A stretch of 64,000 nt of DNA from Macrostomum lignano (taxonomy: Eukaryota). The notes beneath the pieces are model-generated. The model made no database searches and had not been told where the DNA came from. It saw only the letters and a list, made by a program, of their open reading frames with translations. The position numbers and the translations under genes are program-made. The stretch lies in assembly GCA_002269645.1 (NCBI GenBank), contig NIVC01000440.1:310001-374000 (forward strand), read 5' to 3'. Positions 8,823-61,389 of this stretch are shown one piece after another; positions within the stretch are counted from its first letter, which is position 1; the number at the start of each line of letters is the position of its first letter.

Positions 8823-9068
8823 TCTGATTTCTATTCTACCAAGCTTATCTGCTGCCTACCTCCCTGTCTGCGTCTCTGTGTCTACTTCTCTTCCGTCTAC
8901 GTCTACCGGCGCCAAAATCTCACCTGCCTACTCGTCTGTAATTTTAACCTCATCAGATTACACAACGTTTCAATCCGAATCGCGCATCATGCAAAGCCAA
9001 CTCGCTCGCACTTATAAAGTTAAAAAAGCCGACTCAAAACTCCAGTGCTCCGTCCTTGGAAAAAAGCA

Positions 9069-11602: not shown

Positions 11603-11703
11603 TCACCCGACTCCCCTTAATCAATGCTGATTGGCTCCGAACTTTGCTGTATCGCCAAGCCCCCAAAGCCGGCACGGGCAGCAGCCGTGGCAAGAATGTG
11701 CTG

Positions 11704-16341: not shown

Positions 16342-17226
16342 TATTGGCGCCACAATTTAGCATCAGATTGGCGCCACAGTGTAGCATCAGATTGGCGCCA
16401 CAATTTAGCATCAGATTGGCGCCACAATACAGCATCAGATTGGCGCCACAATATAGCATCAGATTGGTGCCACAATATAGATCAGATTGGCGCCACAATA
16501 CAGCATCAGATTGGCGCCACAATATAGCATCAGATTGGCGCCACAATATAGATCAGATTGGCGCCACAATACAGCATCAGATTGGCGCCACAATATAGCA
16601 TCAGATTGGCGCCACAATATAGATCAGATTGGCGCCACAATACAGCATCAGATTGGCGCCACAACACAGCATCAGATTAGCGCAACAGTGTAGCATCAGA
16701 TTAGCGCAACAGTGTAGCATCAGATTGGCGCCACAATATAGATCAGATTGGCAGCACAATACAGCATCAGATTGGCGCCACAATACAGCATCAGATTGGC
16801 GCCACAATTTAGCATCAGATTAGCGCAACAGTGTAGCATCAGATTGGCGCCACAATACAGCATCAGATTAGCGCCACAATACAGCATCAGATTAGCGCCA
16901 CAATTTAGCATCAGATTAGCGCAACAGTGTAGCATCAGATTAGCGCAACAGTGTAGCATCAGATTAGCGCAACAGTGTAGCATCAGATTGGCGCCACAGT
17001 GTAGCATCAGATTGGCGCCACAACACAGCATCAGATTGGCGCCACAATACAGCATCAGATTGGCGCGACAATACAGCATCAGATTGGCGCCACAACACAG
17101 CATCAGATTGGCGCCACAACACAGCATCAGATTGGCGCCACAATACAGCATCAGATTGGCGCCACAACACAGCATCAGATTGCCGCCACAATGCAGCATC
17201 AGATTGCCGCCACAATGCAGCATCAG
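16342..17226. repeat. 24-bp minisatellite GCATCAGATTGGCGCCACAATACA ending about 20 bp before the GSTO copy 3 ATG
   Basis: About 36 units. Confidence 0.96.
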
Positions 17227-17246
17227 TTCCAATCGAATGTAAATGC

Positions 17247-18781
17247 ATGCGACTGCCAAGCAGTACGATTCCAGCCTCTCTGCTCCATCGCAGAGCTATA
17301 AAGCGATGGTTCAGCGGCAGGGGAGGCGACAGTCTAGTTGTCATGGAAACGCGTCACCTAGAAACCGGGGATCCCGAACCGCCAGAGCTGCCCAGGGGCA
17401 GTGAGGTGCTCACCTTGTACTCCATGCTGTACTGCCCCTACGCACAGCGAACCCGCCTGGTGCTGCAGCACAAGCAGCTGCCGCACCGCGTCATCAACGT
17501 GAATTTGGTGCGCAAACCCGATTGGTTCCTGGCCAGGGCTCCGCTGCCCTCCGCCAAGGTGCCAATCATTGAGCTGCCGGGTGACGAGAAACTTCGCTTA
17601 GCCGATTCTTTGATCACCTGCGAGTTCTTGGAAGAGGCTTTTGCTGGTGCGACTTCGAATGGAACTGACGGCGACCTGATGCCTTCGATGGGGACACCTG
17701 GTGCCCCAAGGCTGAGGGCTGCTCAGAGACAAACGATTAGCAGAAATGATGCCATGATCTCCGCTTTCTACAGGTGAGGTCTGAGTTGGTTCAGGCTGTG
17801 AGCTTCAGTGTGTTCAGGTGAAACGATTCGTGCTTTTAATAAGATGTATTTCAGGGGTTCAGGTACTATGCCACAGGGGCTCAGATACTATACTTCAGGG
17901 GCTCAGATACTATACTTCAGTGGCTCAGATACTATACTTCAGTGGCTCAGATACTCAGGGGCTCTGATACTATACTTCAGGGGCTCAGATGCTATACTTC
18001 AGGGGCTCAGATGCTATACTTCAGGCGCTCAGATGCTATACTTCAGGGGCTCAGATGCTATACTTCAGGCGCTCAGATGCTATACTTCAGGGGCTCAGAT
18101 GCTATACTTCAGGCGCTCAGATACTATACTTCAGGGACTCAGATACTATACTTCAGTGGCTCATACTATACTTCAGGGGCTCAGATACTATACTTCAGGG
18201 GCTCAGATGCTATACTTCAGGGGCTCAGATGCTATACTTCAGGGCCTCAGATGCTATACTTCAGGGCCTCAGATGCTATACTTCAGGCGCTCAGATGCTG
18301 AGCTTCAGACGAAACCTTTGATGGTCATGTCTTATTGAAAATGCCACACAGTTGAACCTTCAGTGGTGGCTCAGTGCGCCAGTGAAATCTGAAGCTGCCA
18401 CCCTAACCAACCGCTAGGTGGGCTCTGAAGAAGGACGAGCCGGCTGAAGAGCGCGAGTTGCTGTGGGACCGCCTGCTGTGGCAGCTGCGCAACCTGCAGG
18501 CCGACCTCCGTGATGGCGGCTTCTTCGGCGGCGCGCGGGCCCAGCTGGCGGACTTCATGGTCTGGCCATGGATAGAGCGACTGCCGCCACTGATGCAGCA
18601 CTACTGCCTGCCGCCAAGGCTACCGGACAGTCTCGGACACCTATCCGCCTGGTCTGAGGCCATGTCCGAGACGGAGCCGGTGCGAGCGACTCGACTGCCC
18701 GACTGGGCGCACCTGGCATTTGTGGAGTCGCACTGGAGACGGGAGCCGAGATACGACTTTCTTGAGAATAGAGAAGACTGA
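17247..18781 (+). CDS. GSTO1: Omega-class glutathione S-transferase copy 3; exons 17247-17773 and 18418-18781
   Basis: Contains LYSMLYCPYAQR, KPDWFL, KVPIIE and LADFMVWPWIERL. The phase-2 intron is AG|gtgagg..ccctaac..gctag|G. A second in-frame ATG lies at 17343. The symbol denotes the family. Confidence 0.9.
17845..18307. repeat. 22-bp minisatellite CTCAGATGCTATACTTCAGGGG in the GSTO copy 3 intron
   Basis: About 20 units. Confidence 0.95.
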
Positions 18782-22235: not shown

Positions 22236-28541
<6,306 letters not shown>

Positions 28542-32719: not shown

Positions 32720-34537
32720 GGTGAGAGTTGCAGTGAGTGTTATAGAGACAGTTACCCTGAAAGTTGCGGTGAGAGTGAGAGTGAGAGTTACAGTGAGAGT
32801 GAAAGTGAGCGTTGCAGTGAGAGTTGCAGTGAGAGTTGCCGTGAGAGTTGCAGTAAGAGTTGCAGTGAGAGTTGCAGTGAGAGTGAGAGTGAGAATTACA
32901 GTGAGAGTGAAAATGAGCGTTGCAGTGAGAGTTGCAGTAAGAGTTGCAGTGAGAGTTGCAGTAAGAGTTGCAGTGAGAGTTGCAGTAAGAGTTGCAGTGA
33001 GAGTTCCAGTGAGAGTTACAGTGAGAGTTACAGTGAGAGTTTGAGTGAGAGTTTGAGTGAGAGTTGCAGTAAGAGTTGCTGTGAGAGTTACAGTGAGAAT
33101 TTGAGTGAGAGTTGCAGTGAGAGTTGCAGTAAGAGTTGCAGTGAGAGTTACAGTGAGAGTTACAGTGAGAGTTACAGTGAGAGTTTGAGTGAGAGTTTGA
33201 GTGAGAGTTGCAGTAAGAGTTGCAGTGAGAGTTACAGTGAGAGTTGCAGTGAGAGTTTGAGTGAGAGTTGCAGTAAGAGTTGCAGTGAGAGTTACAGTGA
33301 GAGTGAAAGTGAGAGTTGCAGTAAGAGTTGCAGTGAGAGTTGCAGTGAGAGTTGCCGTGAGAGTTGCAGTAAGAGTTGCAGTGAAAGTTACAGTGAGAGT
33401 TTGAGTGAGAGTTTGAGTGAGAGTTGCAGTAAGAGTTGCAGTGAGAGTTACAGTGAGAGTTGCAGTGAGAGTTGCAGTGAGAGTTGCAGTGAGAGTTTGA
33501 GTGAGAGTTGCAGTGAGAGTTGCAGTGAGAGTGAGAGTGAGAGTTCCAGTGAGAGTTACAGTGAGAGTTACAGTGGGAGTTTGAGTGAGAGTTTGAGTGA
33601 GAGTTGCAGTAAGAGTTGCAGTGAGAGTTACAGTGGGAGTTTGAGTGAGAGTTTGAGTGAGAGTTGCAGTAAGAGTTGCAGTGAGAGTTACAGTGAGAAT
33701 TTGAGTGAGAGTTGCAGTGAGAGTTGCAGTAAGAGTTGCTGTGAGAGTTACAGTGAGAATTTGAGTGAGAGTTGCAGTGAGAGTTGCAGTGAGAGTTGCA
33801 GTGAGAGTGAGAGTGAGAGTTGCAGTGAGAGTTGCAGTGAGAGTTGCAGTGAGAGTGAGAGTGAGAGTTGCAGTGAGAGTTGCAGTGAGAGTGAGAGTGA
33901 GAATTACAGTGAGAGTGAAAATGAGCGTTGCAGTGAGAGTTGCAGTAAGAGTTGCAGTGAGAGTTGCAGTAAGAGTTGCAGTGAGAGTTGCAGTAAGAGT
34001 TGCAGTGAGAGTTCCAGTGAGAGTTACAGTGAGAGTTTGAGTGAGAGTTTGAGTGAGAGTTGCAGTAAGAGTTGCTGTGAGAGTTACAGTGAGAATTTGA
34101 GTGAGAGTTGCAGTGAGAGTTGCAGTAAGAGTTACAGTGAGAGTTACAGTGAGAGTTTGAGTGAGAGTTTGAGTGAGAGTTTGAGTGAGAGTTGCAGTAA
34201 GAGTTGCTGTGAGAGTTACAGTGAGAATTTGAGTGAGAGTTGCAGTGAGAGTTGCAGTAAGAGTTGCAGTGAGAGTTACAGTGAGAGTTACAGTGAGAGT
34301 TACAGTGAGAGTTTGAGTGAGAGTTTGAGTGAGAGTTTGAGTGAGAGTTGCAGTAAGAGTTGCTGTGAGAGTTACAGTGAGAATTTGAGTGAGAGTTGCA
34401 GTGAGAGTTGCAGTAAGAGTTGCAGTGAGAGTTGCAGTAAGAGTTGCAGTGAGAGTTACAGTGAGAGTTGCAGTGAGAGTGAGAGTGAGAGTTACAGTGA
34501 GAGTGAGAGTTGCAGTGAGAGTTGCAGTAAGAGTTAC

Positions 34538-34570
<33 letters not shown>

Positions 34571-35015
34571 TACAGTTACAGTGAGAGTTACAGTGAGAGT
34601 TACAGTGAGAGTTACAGTTAGAGTTACAGTGAGAGTTACAGTGAGAGTGAGAGTGAGAGTTGCAGTGAGAGTTACAGTGAGAGTTACAGTGAGAGTTACA
34701 GTGAGAGTTACAGTGAGAGTTACAGTGAGAGTTACAGTGAGAGTTACAGTGAGAGTTACAGTGAGAGTTACAGTGAGAGTTACAGTGAGAGTTACAGTGA
34801 GAGTTACAGTGAGAGTTACAGTGAGAGTTACAGTGAGAGTTACAGTGAGAGTTGCAGTAAGAGTTACAGTGAGAGTTACAGTGAGAGTTACAGTGAGAGT
34901 TGCAGTGAGAGTTACAGTGAGAGTTACAGTGAGAGTTACAGTGAGAGTTGCAGTGAGAGTTACAGTGAGAGTTACAGTGAGAGTGAGAGTTGCAGTGAGA
35001 GTTGCAGTTAGAGTG

Positions 35016-35050
<35 letters not shown>

Positions 35051-35141
35051 TACAGTGAGAGTTACAGTGAGAGTTGCAGTGAGAGTTACAGTGAGAGTTA
35101 CAGTGAGAGTGAGAGTTGCAGTGAGAGTTGCAGTTAGAGTG

Positions 35142-35176
<35 letters not shown>

Positions 35177-35303
35177 TACAGTGAGAGTTACAGTGAGAGT
35201 TGCAGTGAGAGTTACAGTGAGAGTTACAGTGAGAGTTACAGTGAGAGTTGCAGTGAGAGTTACAGTGAGAGTGAGAGTTGCAGTGAGAGTTGCAGTTAGA
35301 GTG

Positions 35304-35338
<35 letters not shown>

Positions 35339-35353
35339 TACAGTGAGAGTTGC

Positions 35354-35386
<33 letters not shown>

Positions 35387-35465
35387 TACAGTGAGAGTTG
35401 CAGTGAGAGTTACAGTGAGAGTTACAGTGAGAGTGAGAGTTGCAGTGAGAGTTGCAGTTAGAGTG

Positions 35466-35500
<35 letters not shown>

Positions 35501-35717
35501 TACAGTGAGAGTTACAGTGAGAGTTGCAGTGAGAGTTACAGTGAGAGTTACAGTGAGAGTGAGAGTTGCAGTGAGAGTTGCAGTTAGAGTGGGAGTGAGA
35601 GTGAGAGTGAGCGTGAGAGTGAGAGTTACAGTGAGAGTTACAGTGAGAGTTGCAGTGAGAGTTACAGTGAGAGTTACAGTGAGAGTGAGAGTTACAGTGA
35701 GAGTTACAGTGAGAGTG

Positions 35718-35752
<35 letters not shown>

Positions 35753-35951
35753 TACAGTGAGAGTTGCAGTGAGAGTTACAGTGAGAGTTACAGTAAGAGT
35801 TACAGTGAGAGTTACAGTGAGAGTTACAGTGAGAGTTGCAGTGAGAGTTACAGTGAGAGTTACAGTGAGAGTTACAGTGAGAGTTGCAGTGAGAGTTACA
35901 GTGAGAGTTACAGTGAGAGTGAGAGTTGCAGTGAGAGTTGCAGTTAGAGTG

Positions 35952-35986
<35 letters not shown>

Positions 35987-36077
35987 TACAGTGAGAGTTA
36001 CAGTGAGAGTTGCAGTGAGAGTTACAGTGAGAGTTACAGTGAGAGTGAGAGTTGCAGTGAGAGTTGCAGTTAGAGTG

Positions 36078-36112
<35 letters not shown>

Positions 36113-36203
36113 TACAGTGAGAGTTACAGTGAGAGTTGCAGTGAGAGTTACAGTGAGAGTTACAGTGAGAGTGAGAGTTACAGTGAGAGTTACAGTGAGA
36201 GTG

Positions 36204-36238
<35 letters not shown>

Positions 36239-36318
36239 TACAGTGAGAGTTACAGTGAGAGTGAGAGTGAGAGTTACAGTGAGAGTTACAGTGAGAGTTA
36301 CAGTGAGAGTTACAGTGA
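32720..36318. repeat. 3.6-kb 12-bp/6-bp satellite GAGAGTT(A/G)CAGT / GAGAGT with higher-order blocks
   Basis: Generates the non-coding SESC and VRVT ORFs. Confidence 0.98.
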
Positions 36319-36914
36319 TCGAGACTTGGGTTACAGTATCAACAGTCTATGTTTGACAGTAGCAAGTGAAATAACAGCAAGCTGTCAGAATTCACACAAT
36401 ACCAACCAGATACCAGATAAAAGTACTTTTGCAGCATTAGCAAGCCAGCGTCACGAATCGTCTAGCAAGCATTCTGAGTCTGTTAGCAGCAACTGCACAA
36501 GGCTTTTGTTGGGATTTTTTCCCTTCCCAAATTGCGCCGCTCCCCCCCCCCGCTCTGTCTCTCGGGGAACGGGCCCATGTAGCAGGGCAGAAGCTGGTAT
36601 GTTTATGAATTGGCTTGGGGCTGAATTACATTAGCAAAATATAAGTGCAGCTGCAATCTGGAAAGTTCAGCATGTTCTGTTTTGGAAAAAACGCAAGTCA
36701 AAAGCATATCTGTCGATAATATATAGAAACATATTTAATTATCAATAGGTGTTCGCAAAGAGCTCGAGTGTTGTAAATAATAACCATAACTCCAATCTAA
36801 ACATTATGGATTTACCGATACTGATGGAGTGCCAGCCCAGGAAGCTGAGCGTTTCTTGGAGTGCTACTACACCAAATTTACTACTGTGCGAGTTTAGCTG
36901 TAAGTAGTACAACT

Positions 36915-37008: not shown

Positions 37009-37116
37009 GCCCTGACGAAGAAATTTAATTTCGAAATATCGGCTACTCAATTTAAATTGACTTTTTTCAGTCCTTTCTGACTTTCTACCGTGTCAGTGCC
37101 CGAGATTGGAGGCGCC

Positions 37117-37188
<72 letters not shown>

Positions 37189-37630
37189 ACTCTCTCTCAT
37201 TCACTCTCTCATTCACTCGCTCTCTCATTCTCTCTCTCATTCACTGTCTCTCATTCACTCTCTCACTCACTCTCTTTCATTCACTCACTCTTTCACTCTC
37301 CCTCATTCACTCTCTCATTCACTCGCTCTCTCATTCTCTCTCTCATTCACTGTCTCTCATTCACTCTCTCACTCACTCTCTTTCATTCACTCACTCTTTC
37401 ACTCTCTCTCTCATTCACTCTCTCTCATTCACTCACTCATTCACTCTCTCTCTCATTCACTCACTCTTTCACATTCTCTCTCATTCACTCACTCTTTCAC
37501 ACGCTCTCTCATTCACTCTCTCATTCACTCTCTCTCATTCACTCTCTCTCATTCTCTCTCATTCTCTCTCTCTCATTCACTCTCTCATTCACTCTCTCTC
37601 ATTTACTCTCTCTCTCATTCATTCCCTCAT

Positions 37631-37709
<79 letters not shown>

Positions 37710-37728
37710 CACTGTCTCTCTCACTCTC
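36915..37728. repeat. (CT)n and CT-rich (CATTCACTCT) tracts at 36915-37003 and 37119-37728
   Basis: Read directly; each tract ends in a YAG. Confidence 0.95.
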
Positions 37729-38225
37729 AGCAAAGAAATATCCAAGTGACTCTGGGGTGACTGTGTTGTCTGTACGGTAAGTGTACACAGTACAGTACAG
37801 TTGATCCATCGTATCCTGTTCTTGTCGAGAAAGTTAAGCATTGGTGGTAAACAATTTTACTGGGTGGTGGCTACGTGTGAAAATAGCTCGCTAGCACTGT
37901 CGGGCTACCTAGCAACACATTGAGTTGGGAGGTAGATGTACTTTTCCATAGGAAAATCTAACTGAGTAGAATCTAGTGCTTTCCCATGCTAGTGCAATCT
38001 GAGTCTAAAAATAGCACGCAGACACAGCTAAAAGTCTTTTTTTAGCACACATCGTCAGTAAACGTCATACAATGCAAGATTTATTTAAAGATGTTGTCGT
38101 TTGCACAAGGGAGGCTCAGAAACTGCACTACATATACTGAGTATGCAGGTGAGGCTAGTGAGGCCAAGATTCAGTGTGCTCTGCAACATTGAAGTGTAAC
38201 TTTCAGAGAGGCTAATAAACTCAGT

Positions 38226-40046
38226 ATGGTAATCGAATACGACAGCTGCTTGGAAGCCGTGCTCAACAATGTGCACTCCGGCTGCTCAGTCATGGTTGGC
38301 GGCTTCGGTCACTGCGGCTCGCCCGAAGGCCTGCTGGCTCAGGTGCTGCAGAGCGGCGCCGAAGGCCTGACGCTGATCTCGGGCACTGGGGGCAGTCCGG
38401 ACTCTGGGCTCGGCCGGCTCATATCAAGGCGTCGGGTGCAAAGTCTGCTCACCACCTACATTGGCGCCAACCGCGAGATCTACCAGCGTCACCTGCTGGG
38501 CCAGCTGGAGCTGCAGCTCCTGCCGCAGGGCACCTTCGCCGAGAGGATCCGGGCTGGCGGCTCCGGGCTGGCGGCCTTCTACACCCGCGCCGGCGTTGGC
38601 ACCGCCATCGCAAACGGCGGCGTGCCGCTCCGATACGGACCCGACGGCGGCGTTCTGGAGGTCACCGCGGCAAAGGAGACGCGCCTGTTCGACGGGGTGG
38701 AGCACGTGCTCGAGACGGCGCTGAAAGCCGATGTCGCCCTGGTGAAGGCCTGGCGCGCCGACCGGGCCGGCAACCTGCAGTTCCGGATGTCGGCGAACAA
38801 CTTCAACGGGATCATGTGCCAGGCGGCTCGGGTCGCCATCGCCGAGGTCGAAGAGATTGTCGACTGCGGACAGTTGCCAGCGGACCAGATCCACGTGCCC
38901 TCGGTGTTCGTGCAGGGCCTGGTGCTGGCGGAGAAGCAGCGGCCGGAGGCGAGGCGAGTGCTGAAGCGGGCGACCTCGCGCCAGCAGCAGCCGGCGTTGA
39001 TGACCATCGCTCGCCGAGTCGCCGCCGAGTTCAAGGCTGACAGCTTCGCGAACGTCGGCCTGGGCATCCCGATGCTGGCCGCCAGCTGCGTGCCACGCGG
39101 CCTGAACGTCTTCCTGCACTCGGAGAACGGGGTGCTCGGCCTGGGCCCCTACCCCAGCTCGGAGGCGGACTTCGATCCGGACCTCATCAACGCCAGTCGG
39201 GAGAGCGTCACGCTTCGGCCCGGGGCGGTCTGCTTTGATTCGGCCACCAGCTTTGCCATTGTGAGCGGCGGCCATCTCAGCATGACTGTGCTGGGCGCTA
39301 CTCAGGTAGAAAAATCCTTGCTACTACTAGTAATATGTAAAATTAAAAACGAGTATTTTACGCGTAAATCTACCAGCGTCGAGCGTATATGGGTTAAGCG
39401 GACTTCTCAAGTAAGTCTCTACTTAAGATGTCCTTGTACTGTAATTGGGTAACAACTCTGGGAAGCACACAGGTTAGAAATACAGTACAGAGTGCAAGTT
39501 GCAACCCCCATCACAGACTCAGTACAGTACGTCTATCAGGCATAAATTACGAGTATATTATTTTGAAATTCTCTAAAAATCTGGTTCATAATGTAGTTGT
39601 TAGCATGCTGCACGACGGCAGTGGCAGAATTGGCATCAACCTCATTTTATCTGAATTTCCCCCTTCAGGTGTCGCAATTCGGCGACATCGCCAACTGGAT
39701 CATCCCTGGCGCAGCCGCCGTCGGCATGGGCGGCGCCATGGAGCTGGTCAGCTGCGGCATCCGCGTGGTGGTCGCCATGCGCCACTGCACTGTGAATGGC
39801 CAGCCAAAAATCCTGTCCAGCTGCACCCTGCCACTGACTGGCAGACGCTGCGTCGATCTCATAGTGACGGACCTGGCGGTGTTCTCCGTGGACAAGAACC
39901 GCGGCCTGACCCTGCTGGAGCTGGCGGACGGTGTAACAGTGAGCCAAGTGGCCGCCTGTACAGACTGCCATTTCGCAATCTCCGACTCTGTGCAACCCAT
40001 GAAACAGGTGGTTGACTGCACTACTAGCGAGCTGGCACGAGTTTGA
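38226..40046 (+). CDS. OXCT1: Succinyl-CoA:3-oxoacid CoA-transferase (SCOT, family I, fused alpha/beta), divergent; exons 38226-39305 and 39669-40046
   Basis: Contains VGGFGHCGSPE, PQGTFAERIRAGGSG, KAWRADRAGNL, IHVPSVFV, NVGLGIP, catalytic HSENGVLG and GMGGAMELV. The phase-0 intron is CAG|gtagaa..ttcag|GTG. Confidence 0.92.
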
Positions 40047-41589: not shown

Positions 41590-41910
41590 CTGATCTACCT
41601 GCCTACCAACGTACCTATAAACCTGCCTTCTAAACTACCTACAATCCTGCCTACCAAACTATTTATCTACTAACCAACCTACCTACCGACCTATCTACCA
41701 ACCTACATGACCTACCTACCTGACCAACCTACCAACCAACCTACCAACCTACCTAACTGATCAACCTATCTACCTACCTGACCAACCTACCAACCTACGT
41801 TCCAGCCTACCTAACAACTTACCTACCTACCTGATCAACCTGCCTACCTACCAACCTACCTGACCAACCCAACAACCTACCTACCTGACCAACCTACCTA
41901 CTACCAACCT
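41590..41910. repeat. Degenerate (ACCT/ACCA)n microsatellite at the FLCN 3' end
   Basis: Read directly. Confidence 0.9.
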
Positions 41911-44900
41911 TACCACCCAGGCCTTGAATCTCCCTCCTGCTGGTGGCGGCCAGGCCTCTAGTCCAGAACTTCAGCACCAGTTCGTCGTTACGCGAGCAGC
42001 CCAGGCTGTCGAGCAGTTCAGAGACCTGCGCATTGCTCAGCTGCTGCTGCTGAGCGCCTTGCACGTAGCAGCAGGTGAAAAACTGTCTTGCCCTGTTCAA
42101 CCAGTCCTCCTTGACGTTGGTGACCAGCAGGTCCAGAGCTTCATCTGGAAGCTGCTGACTGTCCAGCAGTTTGTCCAGCTCGTCGATAAGTCCGGGCAGT
42201 CCCAGCAGGGAGTTGTAGGCGCTGCTGGGCACGGGGCAGTTGGTGGCGCAGCTCACGGCCAGGTCGTCAACAGAGGCAAAGGATTCGGCTGCCAGGCTGC
42301 GAAGGTCAGCGCGGCATTCCAGCACGAGCATCGGATGGCTGACGGGATCGGTGAGCACAATGTCCGGGATGACCGCCTCCCAGGCCAGGCCAAGGAAGTT
42401 GCACCTGCGGTTTGGAAATTGCAAATTTGTCAGTGACTGACAATGACTGAAAATGAGTCATTGACTGATGATCGATTGAAAATGAGTCATTGGCTGATGA
42501 TCGATTGAAAATGAGTCATTGACTGATGATCGATTGAAAATGAGTCATTGGCTGATGATCGATTGAAAATGAGTCATTGACTGATGATCGATTGAAAATG
42601 AGTCATTGGCTGATGATCGATTGAAAATGAGCCATTGACTGATGATCGATTGAAAATGAGTCATTGGCTGATGATCGATTGAAAATGAGTCATTGGCTGA
42701 TGATCGATTGAAAATGAGTCATTGGCTGATGATCGATTGAAAATGAGTCATTGGCTGATGACCGATTGAAAATGAGTCATTGGCTGATGATCGATTGAAA
42801 ATGAGTCATTGACTGATGATTGATTGAAAATGAGTCATTGGCTGATGATCGATTGAAAATGAGTCATTGACTGATGATCGATTGAAAATGAGTCATTGAC
42901 TGATGATCGATTGAAAATGAGTCATTGGCTGACGATCGATTGAAAATGAGTCATTGACTGATGATCGATTGAAAATGAGTCATTGGCTGATGATCGATTG
43001 AAAATGAGTCATTGACTGATGACCGATTGAAAATGAGTCATTGGCTGATGATCGATTGAAAATGAGTCATTGACTGACGATGATCGATTGAAAATGAGTC
43101 ATTGACTGACGATGATCGATTGAAAATGAGTCATTGGCTGATGATCGATTGAAAATGAGTCATTGGCTGATGATCGATTGAAAATGAGTCATTGACTGAT
43201 GATCGATTGAAAATGAGTCATTGACTGACGATGATCGATTGAAAATGAGTCATTGGCTGATGATCGATTGAAAATGAGTCATTGGCTGATGATCGATTGA
43301 AAATGAGTCATTGACTGATGATCGATTGAAAATGAGTCATTGGCTGATGATCGATTAAAAATGAGTCATTGGCTGATGATCGATTGAAAATGAGTCATTG
43401 GCTGATGATCGATTGAAAATGAGTCATTGGCTGATGACCGATTGAAAATGAGTCATTGGCTGATGATCGATTGAAAATGAGTCATTGACTGACGATGATC
43501 GATTGAAAATGAGTCATTGACTGACGATGATCGATTGAAAATGAGTCATTGGCTGATGATCGATTGAAAATGAGTCATTGACTGACGATGATCGATTGAA
43601 AATGAGTCATTGAGGCGATTAAAGAGTAATCGATTGGTGACTATTGGTTGAAAATGAGTCATTGATTGATAGTGATTGGTTAAAAATAAGTTTTTGATTA
43701 GGATGATTGATTAAAGATGAGTCATTGATGGGTGATGATTGATTGAAAATGAAAATGAGTCATTGATTTGCGATGATTAGTTGGAAATGAGTCATTGATT
43801 TGCGATGATTAGTTGAAATGAGTCATTGATTTGCGATGATTAGTTGGAAATGAGTCATTGATTTGCGATGATTAGTTGAAAATGAGTCATTGACTTGCGA
43901 TGATTAGTTGAAAATGAGTCATTGATTTGCGATGATTAGTTGAAAATGAGTCATTGATTTGCGATGATTAGTTGGAAATGAGTCATTGATTTGCGATGAT
44001 TAGTTGAAAATGAGTCATTGATTGGTGATGATTAGTTGAAAATGAGTCATTGATTGGTGATGATTAGTTGAAATGAGTCATTGATTGGTGATGATTAGTT
44101 GAAAATGAGTCATTGATTGGTGATGATTAGTTGAAAATGAGTCATTGATTTGCGATGATTAGTTGAAAATGAGTCATTGATTTGCGATGATTAGTTGGGA
44201 ATGAGTCATTGATTTGCGATGATTAGTTGGAAATGAGTCATTGATTTGCGATGATTAGTTGAAAATGAGTCATTGATTTGCGATGATTAGTTGAAAATGA
44301 GTCATTGATTTGCGATGATTAGTTGGGAATGAGTCATTGATTTGCGATGATTAGTTGAAAATGAGTCATTGATTGGTGATGATTAGTTGGAAATGAGTCA
44401 TTGATTTGCGATGATTAGTTGAAAATGAGTCATTGATTTGCGATGATTAGTTGAAAATGAGTCATTGATCGGTGATGATTGGTTGAAAATGAGTCATTGA
44501 TTTGCGATGATTAGTTGGAAATGAGTCATTGATTTGCGATGATTAGTTGAAAATGAGTCATTGATTTGCGATGATTAGTTGAAAATGAGTCATTGATTTG
44601 CGATGATTAGTTGAAAATGAGTCATTGATTGGTGATGATTGGTTGGAAATGAGTCATTGACTAATGAGGAATGAAAATGACATACCAGACTCACCTGTAA
44701 GGCTCTTCATACACGCTGGAATTCAGCACCTCTTGTACGCAGTTGTGCGGCAAAATCTGTCGCATCAGCTTGAAAAATGAGGCGGCCAGAGCGGGCAGGT
44801 TGGTGCGGAACACAATCTGATTGCCGGTGACCAGGTGGTACAGGAGGAGGAGGAAGATGTGCGGCTGTCTGTGCAGACTCAGCTGCGGCGAGTCCGGGTC

Positions 44901-46631
44901 CAGCACTGACACGGACCTGCGGGGAGATTGTGTAATAGGCTAGATTAGCAATCCGTTTTACAATAGTCAGGTTGGCTAGATTAGCAATCCATTTTAAAAT
45001 CATTAAGTTGACTAGATTAGCAATCCATTTTAAAATCGTCAAGTTGACTAGATTAGCAATCCATTTTAAAATCATTAAGTTGACTAGATTAGCAATCCAT
45101 TTTAAAATCGTCAAGTTGGCTAAATTAGCAATCCATTTTAAAATCGTCAAGTTGGCTAGATTAGCAATCCATTTTACAATCGTCAAGTTGGCTAGATTAG
45201 CAATCCACCAGTTCCTTTGCGCAATGCAGCTTAGCACATTGTACTCCATCATACCTGTCAATCAAGTTGGTAACAGGCACCCGTTTTAGCCGCTGCCTGA
45301 TGTGCCTGAGCGAGTGGAACACGATGCTGACCACCGCGTTACCGCCAGCGGGTTTGCAAACCGTGGGAGCGGTTGGAGTTGGCACCACCGTTCTGGTGCC
45401 CTCGTCCTCGGAATCCTGAGAAGGTTTGAGTAGACAGTAGATTTACAATTGTGCTTACGGTAGCTAAATGAAATTACACTATGACCTATGAGCGATTTTA
45501 AACTATGACCTATGAGCGATTTTAAACTATGACCTATGAGCGAATTTAAACTATGACCTATGAGCGATTTTACACTATGACCTATGAGCGAATTTAAACC
45601 ATGACTTATGAGCGAATTTTAACTATGGCCTACGAGCGAATTTAAATTATGACCTATGAGGAAAGTAAAACTATGACCTATGAGCAAATCTACATTATCA
45701 TTCATGAGTCTGCATAATCCATAACAATCTTGCAGCTAAACCATGACCACTGAAAAGCTCAACTATGACCCATGAGCACCTCGCTATCCAGCAGGCAGTC
45801 CTGATCAGCGGCCATCATCTGCAGTTCCTCCACCAGCTCGTCCTCAGTCGGCCGGCCCACCCGAATCTCCTCCCGTTGCCAGCCGCGCAGCATCCAGGAG
45901 AACCAGAGATGAAGCCGCTTGAACACGGCCGGGTCGCCGGTGAGCTGAGCCAATGACCTAGCTGGATTATCCGACCGGCGCATTCTCAACCAGCTCGAGC
46001 CGTTGATTCGAGTCGCCTTGGCGCTGCCCTGACGCAGCTGCTCAGCTTGAAACTGTGCAGTAGCCATCTGCTTCAATGCGCCGCTAATCCTGCCAATCTG
46101 AGCCACCAGCCAAGGCCAGGCCTGCAACAGCATGCGACTGTCGGTGGACATCACAACGACAGCGTATTGGCTAGTCAGACCCCGAGCCTTGGCGTCGTCC
46201 AGTTGAAACGGCGAGCCCATCACGTGACCATTGACCGGGTCGCCAAAGTACATGGCGCTAGTTGGACAAACTTCGCAGGAGTGCACGCGAAGGCAGGCCT
46301 GACGGAGACGGCTGTACAACTGGCTAGGCCAGGTGGGGTGCTGACTGGAGACCAGGTGCACCCCGGCAGAGGCGTCCTCGGTGTGCATAGCCAGAATGTT
46401 TGGCGGCATGGATCGGCAGGAAGGGCAGGCGACAACTGGGAAGCACACGGATGCGGGCGGAGGCTGCTGCTGGGTCAACAGTGTCTCCTCGGCTCGGGCT
46501 GGGGATGGCGGAGTCGGCGCCACCTCCAGCAGTTGACGGGAGCTGCTGGGCAGCTGTTGCATGACCTGCATGCATAGCACTACTGAAGGACCGTGGTCCT
46601 CGCAGAAGTGTGTTAGCGCAATGAGACAGTT
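41894..46631 (-). CDS. FLCN: Folliculin; exons 46631-45780, 45415-45255, 44916-44695, 42404-41894; no genomic ATG at the expected start
   Basis: Contains IALTHFCEDHGP, SSQHP, LRQACLR..SCEVCP, ARGL..QYAVV, VFKRLHLWFSWML, FHSLRHIRQ, LVTGNQIV and YEEPYR|CNFLGL. All three GT-AG joins are in frame; the intron 1 donor (gtgctc) is weak. Confidence 0.92.
42445..44665. repeat. Two related minisatellites in FLCN intron 3: 29-bp TGAAAATGAGTCATTGGCTGATGATCGAT (to about 43610) and 32-bp GAAAATGAGTCATTGATTTGCGATGATTAGTT (from about 43750)
   Basis: They share an AATGAGTCATTG core and are joined by degenerate transitional units. Confidence 0.97.
44935..45205. repeat. 36-bp minisatellite GCTAGATTAGCAATCCATTTTAAAATCGTCAAGTTG in FLCN intron 2
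   Basis: About 7 units. Confidence 0.95.
45478..45690. repeat. 24-bp minisatellite TATGACCTATGAGCGATTTTAAAC in FLCN intron 1
   Basis: About 9 units. Confidence 0.93.
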
Positions 46632-46739
46632 CTGAAAGATTTCGGATTGAGATTTAGAAATAATAAAAACCAATTAAGTGCTCCGGTTTTAAGTGCCAAT
46701 CAAATAGATATTATCAAGTTCTCAAGCTCACTCACTACT

Positions 46740-47640
46740 TGTCGTAGGGATAAGAAAGAGGGGGTGATGAAGTTGAGAGGAAGACAAGAAAATGATAGCC
46801 ACAGGCACACCCTATAGACAGCGATGTAGGTGTGGTTAAGATAGAGGGGTAGGGTTGGACAATGGACAAGAAGATCAATAAAAACAGCACGCGCGATAAA
46901 AAGCAATAAAATGGGGAGGCCCGGCAAGGAGAAAGGGTAGGGTTGAGACTCGAGAGGAAGACCAGTTAACCCCACAGTAGCACAAAAAGTGGGGTTGGCT
47001 AAAATAGGAAAGAGGGTGTGGGTTGAGAGAGCAGATAAGTGAGTGGATCGATAACTACATCACGCGCAATAAAAAGCAATAGAATAGGGTTGGTCAGAAA
47101 AGAAGAAAGGGTTGAGACTAAAGAGGAAGACCAGATAATCGATAACCACAGCAAACATTGTAAAGTAGTAGCGTTAAAGTGAGGTTGGCTGGAATAGGAA
47201 AGTGGGTGAGTTGAGAGAGCCGATAAATGGATCGATAATGACATCACGCGATATAAAAATCAATAGAATAGGGTTGGCCAGACTATTGAGAGGGTTTGGT
47301 TGGCAGAGCCATATAATCGATCATCACAGCACACGCTATAAAACAGCAAAGATAAGCGTTGTCTGGAGTGGAAAGAAGGGGGCGGGGTCGAGAGGCAGAC
47401 CAAATAATCGATAACCATCCCACACGCTGGAGTTGACTGGAATAGGAAGGACAGGGTGGGGTGGGGTTCACAGCACGCGCTATAAAAATCAATAAAATGG
47501 GGTTGGCCGAAAAGGAACAGGAGGGTGGGGCTGAGAGGCCGACCCTATCGGTAATTATCAATAACAACAGGCCTACAGCAGCCCTATAAAAGCGACGAAG
47601 TGGGGTTGATTGTAATACAAAATACGGAATAGACCAGATC
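46740..47640. repeat. Old, degenerate tandem repeat with a recurring CACGCG..ATAAAAA(G/T)CAAT(A)..ATAGGGTTGG block upstream of FLCN
   Basis: The motif recurs near 46890, 47060, 47245 and 47475; unit boundaries are unclear. Confidence 0.6.
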
Positions 47641-48824
47641 GATAAGTTAATATTTATGAATATTAGTACTTTGGATTGGACCAAACAAGCCCTATTTTAT
47701 AACAATATCAAGGAAATGCATACAAAAAACCAACACTGAATAATGACTAATTTGAAATAATACAGTAATTTTGCTTTCCAAGCTTTATACTACAACTAGT
47801 CCAATATATTTCGACCTATATTACAAAGCAGTAATAAATTAAGTGTTGTAGTCATATTCAGCTTTATTGAAGAACTTGATGAAGCACCATACTGACTTTA
47901 AAATAGTTAGATAATTCAAATCAGCTTGTGCGCAACTTGTAGTTTCAAAAAGTTGGTAAAAAAACAAAATATATTGGAGGACAGGCTTTGCATCAGAGAT
48001 CAATAAATTGATTATTATTATTGCAGTTAATAGGAGACTAATTGAGCAGCAGGCAGGTACTAATAACTAGTTAATTAGTTCACTATGCTGAAAATACACG
48101 CTGAACTAATCGAAAATATGTACAGAACAAATTTTGCTTATATTTTATCGTTTGCTGCTAGGGCTCAAAGAGATTACTAAGGTAATTAGCAGCTGGTGAG
48201 TCAAACGAAAACAGAGAGCCAAACTAAGAAGACAATTTACAAATAGATAGGCGTATGTAAAGCAAAAATAGGCCATAAAATACTTCACATACTACTGCGG
48301 TAGACAGGAAGCATTATTAATTAGGTAGTAAGGAAGATAATAGTAGACTTTGTAAAATTTGAATAAACAATAATAATGACTTTGTTTCATAAGTTGGGCA
48401 GCAAAAACGATTGCGATTATAAACAGAAGGCCATTGATGAGAAAAATAAATTATTATTAAAGTACATATGTTAATTGCGTTGTCAAAATAAATACTAAGT
48501 AATAATATATACAGTACAACGGCATAAGCGGTACAACAAACAATACATATAGCAATAAAAAGCAGGGAAAAAAAGAGTACGTTTTGTCCTACTAAAAAAT
48601 AGCGCAAACAGACAAACAAAAATATTGTGGTTAAGGGTCTGACTGATAATTGCACAGTCTGACTAATGATTGTATTGCACTAACTATAAAATAAGTTTTT
48701 CTAACAACTATAAACCTCGTTTGAAAATAGTTTGGCAGCAGATAAACTAATACAACAAAATCGGGTATGATCTGTTTTGGAGTTGGAGTCACCTTTAAAC
48801 TGCACAACACTCGTTTATCAGTCG

Positions 48825-49820
48825 CTTTTACTGTAGCTCATCCAGGTAAACCCCAATTACTGTAACTCATCAAGGTAAACCCCAATTACTGCAACTCATC
48901 AAGGTAAACCCCAATTACTGCAACTCATCCAGGTAAACCCCAATCACTGTAACTCATCCAGGTAAACCCCAATCACTGTAACTCATCCAGGTAAACCCCA
49001 ATCACTGTAACACATCCAGGTAAACCCCAATCACTGTAACACATCCAGGTAAACCCCAATCACTGTAACACATCCAGGTAAACCCCAATTACTGTAACAC
49101 ATCCAGGTAAACCCCAATTACTGTAACTCATCCAGGTAAACCCCAATCACTGTAACACATCCAGGTAAACCCCAATTACTGTAACTCATCCAGGTAAACC
49201 CCAATTACTGTAACTCATCCAGGTAAACCCCAATTACTGTAACTCATCCAGGTAAACCGCAATTATAGTAACCCATCCAGGTAGACTCCAATTACTGTAA
49301 CTCATCCAGGTAAACCGCAATTACTGTAGCTCATCCAGGTAAACCCCAATTACTGTAACTCATCCAGGTAAACCCCAATTACTGTAGCTCATCCAGGTAG
49401 ACTCCAATTACTGTAACTCATTCAGGTAAACCGCAATTACTGTAGCTCATCCAGGTAAACCCCAATTACTGTAACTCATCCAGGTAAACCCCAATTACTG
49501 TAGCTCATCCAGGTAAACCCTAATTACTGTAACTCATCCAGGTAAACCGCAATTACTGTAGCTCATCCAGGTAAACCCCAATTACTGTAGCTCATCCAGG
49601 TAGACTCCAATTACTGTAACTCATCCAGGTAAACCGCAATTACTGTAGCTCATCCAGGTAAACCCCAATTACTGTAACTCATCCAGGTAAACCCCAATTA
49701 CTGTAGCTCATCCAGGTAAACCCTAATTACTGTAACTCATCCAGGTAAACCGCAATTACTGTAGCTCATCCAGGTAAACCCCAATCACTGTAACTCATCC
49801 AGGTAAACCCCAATTACTGT
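48825..49820. repeat. 29-bp minisatellite CATCCAGGTAAACCCCAATTACTGTAACT between FoxN and FLCN
   Basis: About 34 units. Confidence 0.96.
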
Positions 49821-49991
49821 CAGCTATTCAAGACCGAATCAAACAAAAACTAATAATAATAGTATTATTACTACCTGTGACGATCAGAACAGATAAACGT
49901 TTAAAAAGAAAGTAATAAAAAATTCAATGACTCTTTCTCATGCATTCGATCGGGGAAAACCAACGACTAGGTAAAACAAATAATATCTGAT

Positions 49992-54962
<4,971 letters not shown>

Positions 54963-55083
54963 TGCTGATGCTGTGGACTTTGAATTCCTACTGTTGTTTG
55001 TCTCAAAGGGTAAAATAGCTTGTACAGATTACTGGAATGGTGAGTAGTAAACAGTGAATCCGTTTAATTAATACGTAAAAATA

Positions 55084-60200: not shown

Positions 60201-60792
60201 GGCGTAAAATTAATTGCTTTGGTTTAACTTACTACTTAGCTGAGAGTAGCTTACACGCAAATGTTGCAGAGTGGCCCATCTAGTTTTTATAATATCTGTG
60301 TTGCTAACTGACGCCAGAATTCCGGACTTCATCTACAGTCCTAAAGAAGGCACAGGTAAAACAATTCTATCTCTATAGTTCATCTACTTACGCATAATTA
60401 CTCGTGCAGTTGCTTTAATTTGGCACCTGGCTATATACATTGTACGAGCTAGAGTTTTTTGTTGTGTCAAGATGCAATGGAGGGCAATGCACATAAAAAG
60501 TGAACTTACCCCAGGCACAGGTAATTCTCTCCGCATAAATAGATTCAGTTAAAGACAACTTCGCAACTTCGACTCGACAAGTTCGAATGTCTTAAAAACG
60601 GAGTTGTTACCAAAAATAAATTATAATATCGTTGCAAACATATAAACTTATGAAGGTAGGAAGCCTTTTCATTTTTTCTGTAGCTCTTCTGGAAAACTGG
60701 GTTGAAGTTCGCTCTAACTCAGCTTAGACGTTCGAGTACTTGCTAAAATTGCATCTTATTTCTGAGAATAAATCGCTCACTTGTCGTTATCA

Positions 60793-61389
60793 ATGGATGT
60801 CCTGAAATGCGTCGTTGTCGGCGACTCAAACGTTGGCAAGACCAGCCTGATTATGACGTACGTACAGAGCGCATTCTACGAAGATTCAATACCGACAGTG
60901 TTTGACTCTCACGAAGTCACGGTTAACCATGGTGAAGCCAACAAAAGCAGGCAGCTGGTTGTGTGCGACACCGCAGGCCAGGAGACCTACGACAGACTGC
61001 GACCGCTCAGTTATCCGGACACCCACGTCTTCCTGTTGTGCTTCTCCGTGAACAACTCGACAAGCTTGAGCAACGTAATAGAGAAATGGCACTGGGAGCT
61101 GAAGCATCACTCTCCCAACACGCCAATCATTCTTGTTGGAACCAAGTCAGATTTGCGAGCGTCTGCTCCAACTGACAAAGCAGTTTCTAGCGAGCGAGGC
61201 TGCCAGGTGGCTAGAGAAATCAAAGCCATAAAGTACATAGAGTGCTCTGCGCGACATCAGGACGGACTGCATCGCCTCTTTGTTGAGGCCATCGCTGCGG
61301 CTGATATGCCCCGAGGCGACAACGGTCGTGCTGATGGTGGCAACAGGAACTCTCTGAATGGTTTGAAGACTCTCTGCAGCGTTTTGTGA
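60793..61389 (+). CDS. Intronless atypical Rho-family (Rac/Cdc42-like) small GTPase, 198 aa
   Basis: Contains KCVVVGDSNVGKT, PTVFD, DTAGQETYDRLRPLSYPDTHVFLLCFS, IILVGTKSDL and YIECSA, and ends in the CAAX box CSVL. Confidence 0.93.
   Translation: MDVLKCVVVGDSNVGKTSLIMTYVQSAFYEDSIPTVFDSHEVTVNHGEANKSRQLVVCDTAGQETYDRLRPLSYPDTHVFLLCFSVNNSTSLSNVIEKWHWELKHHSPNTPIILVGTKSDLRASAPTDKAVSSERGCQVAREIKAIKYIECSARHQDGLHRLFVEAIAAADMPRGDNGRADGGNRNSLNGLKTLCSVL

What the first reader, a model, noticed from the sequence alone, without database searches (positions are those of the whole stretch)
46600..46680. Folliculin lacks a genomic start codon: a splice acceptor sits exactly where the conserved Met belongs (spliced-leader-donated AUG)
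The minus strand reads ...tttttattatttctaaatctcaatccgaaatctttcag|AAC TGT CTC ATT GCG CTA ACA CAC TTC TGC GAG. There is no contiguous in-frame ATG upstream (stop at 46676-46674). The next in-frame ATG (46571) would delete the conserved HFCExHG block. Adding AUG at the acceptor gives M-N-C-L-I-A-L-T-H-F-C-E, which aligns without gaps to vertebrate M-N-A-I-V-A-L-C-H-F-C-E. Flatworm spliced leaders end in AUG, and in Schistosoma that AUG has been shown to act as initiator. I infer that translation of this mTORC1/Rag regulator depends on trans-splicing.
Basis: partly seen in the sequence, partly recalled or inferred. Interest (0 to 1): 0.85.

Follow-up and report, generated by a model that had tools for sequence, protein, structure and literature searches.

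The report
Folliculin start codon supplied by spliced leader
In the flatworm Macrostomum lignano the folliculin gene has no start codon of its own: its coding sequence begins at a splice acceptor exactly at codon 2, so the AUG most likely comes from the trans-spliced leader RNA, a mechanism already known in flatworms and probably the reason GenBank calls this protein "partial".

Summary
On the minus strand, tttcag|AAC TGT CTC... places an AG (46633-46632) directly before the codon that aligns with residue 2 of human folliculin. An in-frame TAA lies 15 codons upstream with no ATG between, and the next in-frame ATG is codon 21.

The window is Macrostomum lignano (identical to NIVC01000440.1). 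My four-exon model without a Met exactly matches GenBank PAA63318.1, which is annotated "partial".

A second folliculin paralog (about 56-60% identity) has the same cag|AAC junction. All six annotated copies lack an in-frame ATG. Four of the six annotated CDSs start on the first base after the AG.

The first 20 codons are under strong purifying selection (dN/dS about 0.05), so translation must begin at or before the acceptor.

The M. lignano spliced leader ends in ...TTGCATG. Joining it gives M-N-C-L-I-A-L-T-H-F-C-E, the canonical N-terminus. I found no plausible cis 5' exon.

Tapeworm and fluke orthologues keep a genomic ATG.

SL-containing reads at this junction were not available, so the trans-splicing step is inferred.

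SL-donated start codons were shown in Schistosoma in 2006 and reported for many Echinococcus transcripts. This is a new member of a known kind, of modest interest.

The parts
46632..46633 (-). AG of the 3' splice acceptor, directly before folliculin codon 2. It is the proposed SL trans-splice site.
   Evidence: The sequence TTTCAG fits the M. lignano trans-acceptor motif [T/C]TNCAG (PMC8629364). The annotated CDS starts at 46631.
46634..46673 (-). Pyrimidine-rich tract upstream of the acceptor. It is open in frame but has no ATG; only a TTG at 46673-46671 and ATT/ATC near-cognate codons.
46674..46676 (-). In-frame TAA stop, 15 codons upstream of the first exon codon.
45780..46631 (-). Folliculin coding exon 1 (284 codons, NCLIALTHFCEDHGP...DSE). 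It holds the Folliculin N-terminal (longin) domain. The donor is GAG|GTGCTC.
46569..46571 (-). Next in-frame genomic ATG (codon 21). Starting here would remove the conserved HFCExHGP block.
   Evidence: The 20 codons upstream of it have dN/dS of about 0.05 between the paralogs.
45255..45415 (-). Folliculin exon 2 (acceptor tctcag|GAT, donor GACAG|GTATGA).
   Evidence: The model matches PAA63318.1 exactly.
44695..44916 (-). Folliculin exon 3, the start of the Folliculin_C (DENN) domain (acceptor ccgcag|GTCC, donor TACAG|GTGAGT).
41894..42404 (-). Folliculin exon 4, including the stop codon (Folliculin_C).
46634..49991 (-). Presumed outron or intergenic region between the upstream Forkhead gene and the folliculin acceptor. 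It holds a degenerate ~180-nt repeat (about 46850-47630) and a 29-nt minisatellite (48828-49820). It has no ATG-(3n)-GT[AG]AG candidate exon and no block conserved with paralog B.
49992..55028 (-). Upstream same-strand neighbour, a Forkhead-domain gene (777 aa in the annotation). The Forkhead-then-folliculin order is kept in both paralog regions.

Best explanation
This is one of two diverged folliculin (FLCN) paralogs of Macrostomum lignano. Its genomic coding sequence starts at codon 2.

Proposed mechanism: the pre-mRNA is SL trans-spliced at the AG at 46633-46632. The 35-nt spliced leader ends in AUG and joins in phase 0, giving 5'-...UUAUUGCAUG|AACUGUCUC...-3'. The SL's 3'-terminal AUG then serves as the initiator and recreates the ancestral N-terminus M-N-C-L-I-A-L-T-H-F-C-E.

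On this reading, full-length folliculin can be made only from trans-spliced mRNA. Unspliced RNA meets an in-frame stop and has no ATG.

**Shown here:**
- the junction, the absence of an ATG and the upstream stop;
- the exact register against other folliculins;
- conservation of the junction in six copies from two paralog families;
- purifying selection from the first codon of the exon;
- public transcript-based models that begin at the acceptor and are flagged partial;
- an SL that ends in ATG (from the literature).

**Inferred:**
- that the SL, rather than some other exon, is joined at this site;
- that ribosomes start at the SL's AUG.
For: 1. **Junction and register.**
2. **Organism.** The window is M. 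lignano: window 31894-56631 is identical to NIVC01000440.1.
3. **Match to GenBank.** My spliced model without a Met is an exact match to PAA63318.1 / PAA82963.1, 'Mlig027378g5, partial'. The same model with M added is not in the collection. The annotated CDS starts at 46631.
4. **How that annotation was built.** It comes from RNA-seq with SL sequences trimmed, and transcript ends were cut at mapped trans-splice sites by the TBONE pipeline (PMC5730564). Had the transcript model reached upstream, the open frame would have extended up to 14 codons further. The model therefore ends at the acceptor.
5. **Second paralog.** Paralog B (Mlig000131g3, 009567g2, 020878g1; 56% identity by tblastn over exon 1, 60% by phmmer) has ctctcag|AACTGC. 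Only TAA CCC TCT CAG lie upstream, and it is also annotated 'partial'.
6. **Selection on the first 20 codons, paralog A versus B.** There are 9 synonymous differences over 14 synonymous sites and 3 nonsynonymous over 46, so pS = 0.64 and pN = 0.065. Ungapped identity is 38% in the 60 nt upstream and 80% in the 60 nt downstream.
7. **The SL.** It ends in ATG with a GTAAG donor, and 30-39% of M. lignano genes and 45% of conserved genes are SL trans-spliced (PMC8629364, PMC5730564).
8. **Not encoded nearby.** The SL sequence is absent from the window and from the fetched loci, so it is not a local cis exon.
9. **No cis candidate.** Neither intergenic region has an ATG-(3n)-GT[AG]AG candidate exon.
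10. **Normal neighbours.** Neighbouring genes in the same annotation start at a normal ATG.
11. **Precedent.** The SL AUG is used as the initiator in Schistosoma and Echinococcus (PMC9851317; PMC3510090).
Against: - No SL-containing read, cDNA or peptide for this gene could be examined. The paper supplements held as text did not list the gene.
- In two of the six copies the annotated CDS starts 6 or 9 nt downstream of the junction rather than on it.
- A very short or weak-donor cis 5' exon cannot be excluded from sequence alone. With any GT allowed as donor, there are 41 chance candidates in the paralog A intergenic region and 84 in paralog B.
- The AUG would sit only 32 nt from the cap. The -3 position is U, which is a poor vertebrate Kozak context (my own knowledge).
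Confidence: 0.85

Rival explanations
1. An unannotated cis-spliced 5' exon, transcribed from the gene's own promoter or shared with the upstream Forkhead transcript, ends in or contains an in-phase ATG and is joined to the acceptor at 46632/46631. The start codon would then be genomic but lie elsewhere.
For: The acceptor alone cannot tell cis from trans splicing. The paralog A intergenic region has 41 ATG-(3n)-GT combinations if any GT is accepted, and two exact ATG|GT sites at 47890 and 47418. Sharing of acceptors between cis and trans splicing is reported in parasitic flatworms (PMC12582326).
Against: - No candidate has a GT[AG]AG donor in either paralog's intergenic region.
- No sequence block is conserved between the two paralogs upstream of the acceptor, apart from the Forkhead exons.
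- All six RNA-seq-based gene models lack an upstream exon and are left 5'-partial.
- A cis exon carrying extra codons would break the very conserved M+7 spacing to the HFCE motif.
Confidence: 0.08
2. Translation starts at the first genomic in-frame ATG (codon 21, 46571). This would give a folliculin without the N-terminal strand. The upstream 20 codons would be 5' UTR.
For: It is the first genomic ATG in frame. Older WormBase/UniRef models of this gene are N-terminally shorter still, starting at SRQLLEV.
Against: The 20 codons before it show dN/dS of about 0.05 between paralogs that are close to saturation at synonymous sites. They encode the block that is near-universal in folliculins. In paralog B the corresponding Met is at a different position (VVMC versus VVLCM), so it is not a conserved start.
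Confidence: 0.03
3. Non-AUG initiation on unspliced or differently processed RNA, for example at the TTG at 46673 just after the stop. This would add 14 residues to the N-terminus.
For: A TTG and ATT/ATC near-cognate codons lie in frame between the stop and the exon in paralog A.
Against: Paralog B has only CCC TCT CAG between its stop and the exon, so it has no near-cognate codon. The upstream stretch is not conserved. The stretch looks like a polypyrimidine tract plus acceptor, not like coding sequence.
Confidence: 0.02
4. An artefact or a dead gene: an assembly error removed the ATG, or the locus is a pseudogene.
For: GenBank flags the protein as partial.
Against: Six independent copies on six contigs show the same junction. 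The 581-codon reading frame is intact across four exons with canonical GT-AG introns. Both Pfam folliculin domains are present. Purifying selection is strong.
Confidence: 0.01

Closest known systems
Flatworm mRNAs that take their initiator methionine from the 3'-terminal AUG of the spliced leader (Cheng, Cohen, Ndegwa & Davis 2006, J Biol Chem 281:733; Schistosoma; extended to Echinococcus in PMC3510090)
   Same: The SL ends in AUG. The acceptor sits in phase 0 at the start of the conserved ORF. The genome has no ATG for the conserved N-terminus. Adding the SL AUG restores the N-terminus seen in orthologues. That restoration is the criterion those studies used.
   Different: The organism is a free-living, early-branching flatworm (Macrostomorpha). 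There the SL ATG has only been remarked on as a 'likely' start codon (PMC10468722). The gene, folliculin, has not been linked to the SL in the searchable literature. The state is fixed in two old paralogs, while the sampled tapeworms and flukes keep a genomic ATG. No transcript or protein evidence was inspected here.
Folliculin (FLCN / BHD), the GTPase-activating protein for RagC/D in the mTORC1 / TFEB pathway (PDB 6ULG, 6NZD)
   Same: The Pfam Folliculin (N-terminal) and Folliculin_C domains are both present. The alignment to human FLCN starts at residue 2 and runs through the N-terminal domain.
   Different: There are two diverged paralogs in M. lignano, each in about three near-identical copies. 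There is no genomic start codon. The intron positions are only partly shared between the two paralogs.
slORFs: reading frames created by SL addition in nematodes, Oikopleura and trypanosomes (slORFfinder, PMC9851317)
   Same: The start codon lies in the leader, and the ORF is invisible to genome-only annotation.
   Different: In those taxa the start is mostly a non-AUG codon in the leader and the ORFs are mostly novel or alternative. Here it is a canonical AUG that completes a deeply conserved protein.
Downstream genes of SL-resolved operons in M. lignano (PMC8629364)
   Same: There is a same-strand upstream gene (Forkhead), and the gene order is conserved in both paralog regions.
   Different: The intergenic distance is 3360 nt, or about 1.6 kb after subtracting the repeats I could detect. 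That paper's limit is 1 kb after repeat adjustment.

Membership tests
SL-AUG-initiated flatworm mRNA (Cheng et al. 2006 class) | The organism has an SL RNA whose exon ends in AUG, directly followed by a 5' splice donor. | tested here: met
   The window is M. lignano. The published SL, CGGTCTCTTACTGCGAAGACTCAATTTATTGCATG, is followed by GTAAG (PMC8629364). This feature rests on the literature; the SL gene itself is not in the window.
SL-AUG-initiated flatworm mRNA (Cheng et al. 2006 class) | [quoted passage not shown] | tested here: met
   tttcag|AAC in paralog A and ctctcag|AAC in paralog B. Both have pyrimidine-rich tracts, and all six copies show it.
SL-AUG-initiated flatworm mRNA (Cheng et al. 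2006 class) | No genomic in-frame AUG that could encode the conserved N-terminus, and the SL AUG restores the N-terminus seen in orthologues. | tested here: met
   A stop and no ATG lie upstream. Exon residue 1 aligns to human residue 2. 89 of 115 homologues have the M+7 spacing.
SL-AUG-initiated flatworm mRNA (Cheng et al. 2006 class) | Transcripts that carry the SL joined at that acceptor. | not testable with these tools
   The evidence is only indirect. The RNA-seq-based, SL-trimmed annotation gives a 5'-partial CDS that starts on the first base after the AG in 4 of 6 copies. No reads or SL track were accessible, and the supplements did not list the gene.
SL-AUG-initiated flatworm mRNA (Cheng et al. 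2006 class) | Translation actually initiates at the SL AUG. | not testable with these tools
   This needs N-terminal proteomics, ribosome profiling or a reporter. Purifying selection on codons 1-20 of the exon shows only that they are translated.
Folliculin (FLCN) | An N-terminal Folliculin/longin domain and a C-terminal Folliculin_C (DENN-like) domain. | tested here: met
   PF11704 at 1.4e-39, and PF16692 at 4.8e-12 and 6.7e-11 in later exons. Human FLCN in the PDB scores 2e-36.
SL-resolved operon, downstream gene (M. lignano definition) | A same-strand upstream gene less than 1 kb away after subtraction of repeats. | tested here: not met
   The distance is 3360 nt. Subtracting the 993-nt minisatellite and about 780 nt of degenerate repeat leaves about 1.6 kb. 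The threshold comes from PMC8629364. I did not have a RepeatMasker library, so the adjustment is incomplete.

The most novel reading that the evidence does not exclude
The genomic start codon was lost before the old duplication that produced the two folliculin paralogs, and the loss has been kept in both since. Folliculin synthesis would then be strictly gated by SL trans-splicing and by translation of short-leader mRNAs carrying the SL's special cap. That would make the arrangement a regulatory coupling between trans-splicing and the mTORC1/Rag nutrient-sensing pathway, not a neutral accident. It would fit the published idea that SL trans-splicing is linked to TOR-dependent translational control (recalled from memory, not checked here).
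Probability: 0.08. Interest if true: 0.6.

Novelty: new member of a known kind. Interest (0 to 1): 0.3.

Why it matters
- **A clean example in a model organism.** A deeply conserved signalling protein has an ORF that is incomplete in the genome and is completed only by RNA processing. M. lignano has transgenesis, so the mechanism can be tested directly.
- **An annotation problem.** GenBank and UniProt list all M. lignano folliculins as partial or N-terminally truncated, although they are probably complete once the SL's Met is added. The same is likely true of other 5'-partial models in this and other flatworm genomes. A simple rule could repair them: a CDS that starts right after an AG, in phase, with its orthologue starting at Met+1.
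- **Evolution of the trait.** Tapeworm and fluke orthologues keep a genomic ATG. The comparison therefore shows that dependence on the SL's AUG is gained gene by gene and lineage by lineage.
- **What it does not change.** It does not alter what is known about the mechanism itself.

Tried and rejected
- **Word-index protein search.** The search for homologous proteins with exon 1 returned nothing. The exact protein is in that collection, so I treated the tool as blind to this protein and did not repeat it.
- **Rfam and tRNA scans of the window.** Both were empty. No SL RNA gene is present here.
- **Gene identifiers in the literature.** I looked for the M. lignano gene ids and 'folliculin' in papers and in held supplements to find an explicit trans-splicing flag. 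Nothing was found.
- **Cheng et al. 2006.** The paper is not held, so I cite it through papers that describe it.
- **Exact look-ups of alternative gene models.** I tried models with M added, with other intron-2 choices, the bacterial-style 304-aa ORF and Met21-start forms. Only the Met-less 581-aa model exists in the collection.
- **A different Macrostomum species.** I first thought the window came from one, because the best representative hit was 60% identical. The exact match and the identical DNA show it is M. lignano and that the 60% hit is a paralog.
- **Operon membership.** I considered it and rejected it on distance.
- **SL-translated Logan ORFs.** I considered looking them up. I dropped the idea because the 90% clusters of both paralogs contain no Logan members.

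Full report
**Observation**

The finding's coordinates and bases are right. On the minus strand the sequence is ...cacttaattggtttttattatttctaaatctcaatccgaaatctttcag|AACTGTCTCATTGCGCTAACACACTTCTGCGAGGACCACGGT. The AG is at 46633-46632 and the exon starts at 46631.

Read upstream in the exon's frame, the codons are TAA (46676-46674) TTG GTT TTT ATT ATT TCT AAA TCT CAA TCC GAA ATC TTT CAG. There is a stop and no ATG. The next in-frame ATG is codon 21, at 46571.

The exon is folliculin. Pfam Folliculin scores 1.4e-39, and Folliculin_C is found in two downstream ORFs. HMMER aligns exon residue 1 (Asn) to residue 2 of human FLCN in 6ULG, and the alignment continues through the whole N-terminal domain.

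Among the best 150 homologues from a 1.8-billion-protein library, 89 of the 115 that start with Met and have the motif detected near the N-terminus carry the HFCE-type motif exactly eight residues in. The window exon carries it seven residues in. Exactly one residue, the Met, is missing.

**What the window is**

The closest relatives in the representative library are Macrostomum lignano proteins that GenBank calls 'partial'. Two of them begin NCLVALTHFCEDHGP, with no Met.

I built a spliced model of the window gene with canonical GT-AG introns. The exons are 46631-45780, 45415-45255, 44916-44695 and 42404-41894.

Without a Met, this 581-residue model is an exact match to PAA63318.1 / PAA82963.1, 'BOX15_Mlig027378g5, partial [Macrostomum lignano]'. 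With M prepended, or with any other variant I tried, nothing matches.

Window bases 31894-56631 are identical to NIVC01000440.1 of assembly GCA_002269645.1. The window is therefore M. lignano itself. The hit at 56-60% identity is a second, diverged folliculin paralog.

**Comparative evidence inside the genome**

M. lignano has two folliculin paralog families:
- Paralog A is the window gene, with copies in loci L002, L003 and L008.
- Paralog B has copies in loci L001, L006 and L007.

Each family has about three near-identical copies, as expected for this hidden polyploid.

All six copies have cag|AACTG[TC]CT, and none has an in-frame ATG between the upstream stop and the junction. In paralog B only TAA CCC TCT CAG precede the junction, so an unspliced RNA has no possible start there, not even a near-cognate one.

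In four of the six copies the annotated CDS begins on the first base after the AG. In the other two it begins 6 and 9 nt further in.

Between the paralogs, the first 20 codons differ at 9 of 14 synonymous sites but at only 3 of 46 nonsynonymous sites (dN/dS about 0.05). The 60 nt upstream of the junction are 38% identical without gaps, against 80% for the 60 nt downstream. Coding constraint therefore starts exactly at the acceptor. This rules out Met21 as the start, and it rules out a pseudogene.

The introns are only partly shared between the paralogs, yet the junction at codon 2 is shared.

**Why the leader is the likely donor**

The M. lignano SL is CGGTCTCTTACTGCGAAGACTCAATTTATTGCATG, followed in its gene by GTAAG. 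The enriched trans-acceptor motif is [T/C]TNCAG, and the window has TTTCAG. Between 30 and 39% of genes, and 45% of genes conserved with human, are SL trans-spliced (PMC8629364 and PMC5730564).

The GenBank annotation was built from RNA-seq after the SL was trimmed. The TBONE pipeline cut transcripts at mapped trans-splice sites, and TransDecoder called the ORFs.

A 5'-partial ORF that starts precisely at AAC means that the transcript model ends within two bases of the acceptor. Otherwise the open frame would have run up to 14 codons further upstream.

Neighbouring genes in the same annotation (CoA-transferase, Josephin, Branch) start at ordinary ATGs. 'Partial' is therefore not a general artefact of this annotation.

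The SL sequence is not in the window or in any fetched locus, so it is supplied from elsewhere.

I searched both intergenic regions (3360 nt for A, 5385 nt for B) for a cis exon with an ATG in phase and a GT[AG]AG donor. There are none. No block is conserved between the two upstream regions apart from the exons of the upstream Forkhead gene.

Joining the SL gives ...UUGCAUG|AAC UGU CUC..., which reads M-N-C-L-I-A-L-T-H-F-C-E.

**Other flatworms**

Genome-derived folliculins of Schistosoma mansoni, Trichobilharzia, Opisthorchis viverrini, Rodentolepis nana / Hymenolepis microstoma and Mesocestoides corti all begin with Met at the canonical position.

I read three of those loci, and each has a genomic ATG:
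- Trichobilharzia szidati...gtgaaATGGATGCA.
- Rodentolepis nana...ttttttgacag|TTACACGGGTATGGAT. The acceptor is 10 nt upstream, so an SL AUG spliced there would be out of frame.
- Opisthorchis viverrini...tttctag|, then 39 nt, then ATGAAC.

A Logan contig of a related flatworm-like folliculin has 137 nt of non-SL sequence before its ATG.

The loss of the genomic ATG is thus not general to flatworms. It is seen in both Macrostomum paralogs.

**What is known already**

All reported flatworm SLs end in AUG (PMC12582326). Cheng et al. 2006 showed that it can serve as the initiator in Schistosoma and listed more than 40 cDNAs that require it (as summarised in PMC9851317).

[quoted passage not shown] Use of the SL AUG was reported to be conserved among neodermatans (PMC3510090).

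For Macrostomum, the SL ATG has been noted as a likely start codon and was deliberately left on reads to help annotation (PMC10468722). No held paper links folliculin to the spliced leader.

This is therefore a new and well-supported member of a known class, not a new mechanism.

**Limits**

I saw no SL-containing read, cDNA or peptide for this gene. The trans-splicing step and initiation at the SL AUG are inferences. A tiny cis exon or one with a weak donor remains possible, at about 8%.

Operon membership with the upstream Forkhead gene does not meet the published distance criterion.

**Verdict**

Confidence in the SL-donated AUG is about 0.85. The novelty is a new member of a known kind, and interest is about 0.3. 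The main practical value is as an annotation fix and as a test case in a flatworm where transgenesis is available.

Noticed in passing
window 54962-55033 (minus strand): The upstream Forkhead gene is also annotated with a non-ATG CDS start (TCT at 55028). That start lies 3 nt after ccattccag|TAA. The AG is at 55033-55032, and TTCCAG fits the M. lignano trans-acceptor motif. If the SL is spliced there, its AUG is followed at once by UAA, giving a start-stop. The first genomic ATG in that frame is at 54962.
   Followed up: partly
window 49992-55028 with 41894-46631; loci L001, L006, L007, L008: The order Forkhead gene then folliculin, on the same strand, is kept in both paralog regions. Paralog A is followed by an opposite-strand CoA-transferase, and paralog B by Josephin and Branch genes. 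This points to an old segmental or whole-genome duplication, older than the recent polyploidy of M. lignano.
   Followed up: partly
L009 1480-1505 (Rodentolepis nana); L010 1455-1505 (Opisthorchis viverrini): In these parasites a strong acceptor lies 10 nt (R. nana) or 39 nt (O. viverrini) upstream of the genomic folliculin ATG. This could be the kind of ancestral state from which an acceptor abutting codon 2 evolved. Whether these sites are trans-spliced was not checked.
   Followed up: no
P0154 (XP_018645191.1, Schistosoma mansoni): The older RefSeq model fuses an upstream ORF, named 'eukaryotic translation initiation factor, putative', to folliculin (...DGVKRT-MDAIVVLCHFCE). The current UniProt model starts at that Met. 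This is probably a read-through or mis-joined gene model.
   Followed up: no
window 1952-2701, 8307-10742, 12123-13259, 16720-18338, 22814-23542, 27634-28306, 33041-36356, 37090-37780, 44972-45261, 48828-49820, 51132-51719, 52931-53482: The window is full of minisatellite arrays that create long spurious ORFs on both strands. One array (44972-45261) lies inside folliculin intron 2, and another (29-nt unit, 34 copies) lies in the region upstream of folliculin.
   Followed up: partly
window 11644-12126 (+), 17247-17777 (+), 60781-61389 (+), 25066-25608 (-), 1306-1854 (+), 38226-40046 (+): Other genes in the window, by Pfam match: two GST N-terminal-domain exons about 5.6 kb apart, a Ras-family small GTPase, an Srw-like 7TM receptor fragment, an acyltransferase fragment and a CoA-transferase (485 aa in the annotation).
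   Followed up: partly
tool behaviour: The word-index protein search returned no hit for exon 1. The exact protein (P0165) and close paralogs are nevertheless in that collection as cluster representatives. A negative from that tool is not evidence of absence for this eukaryotic protein.
   Followed up: yes
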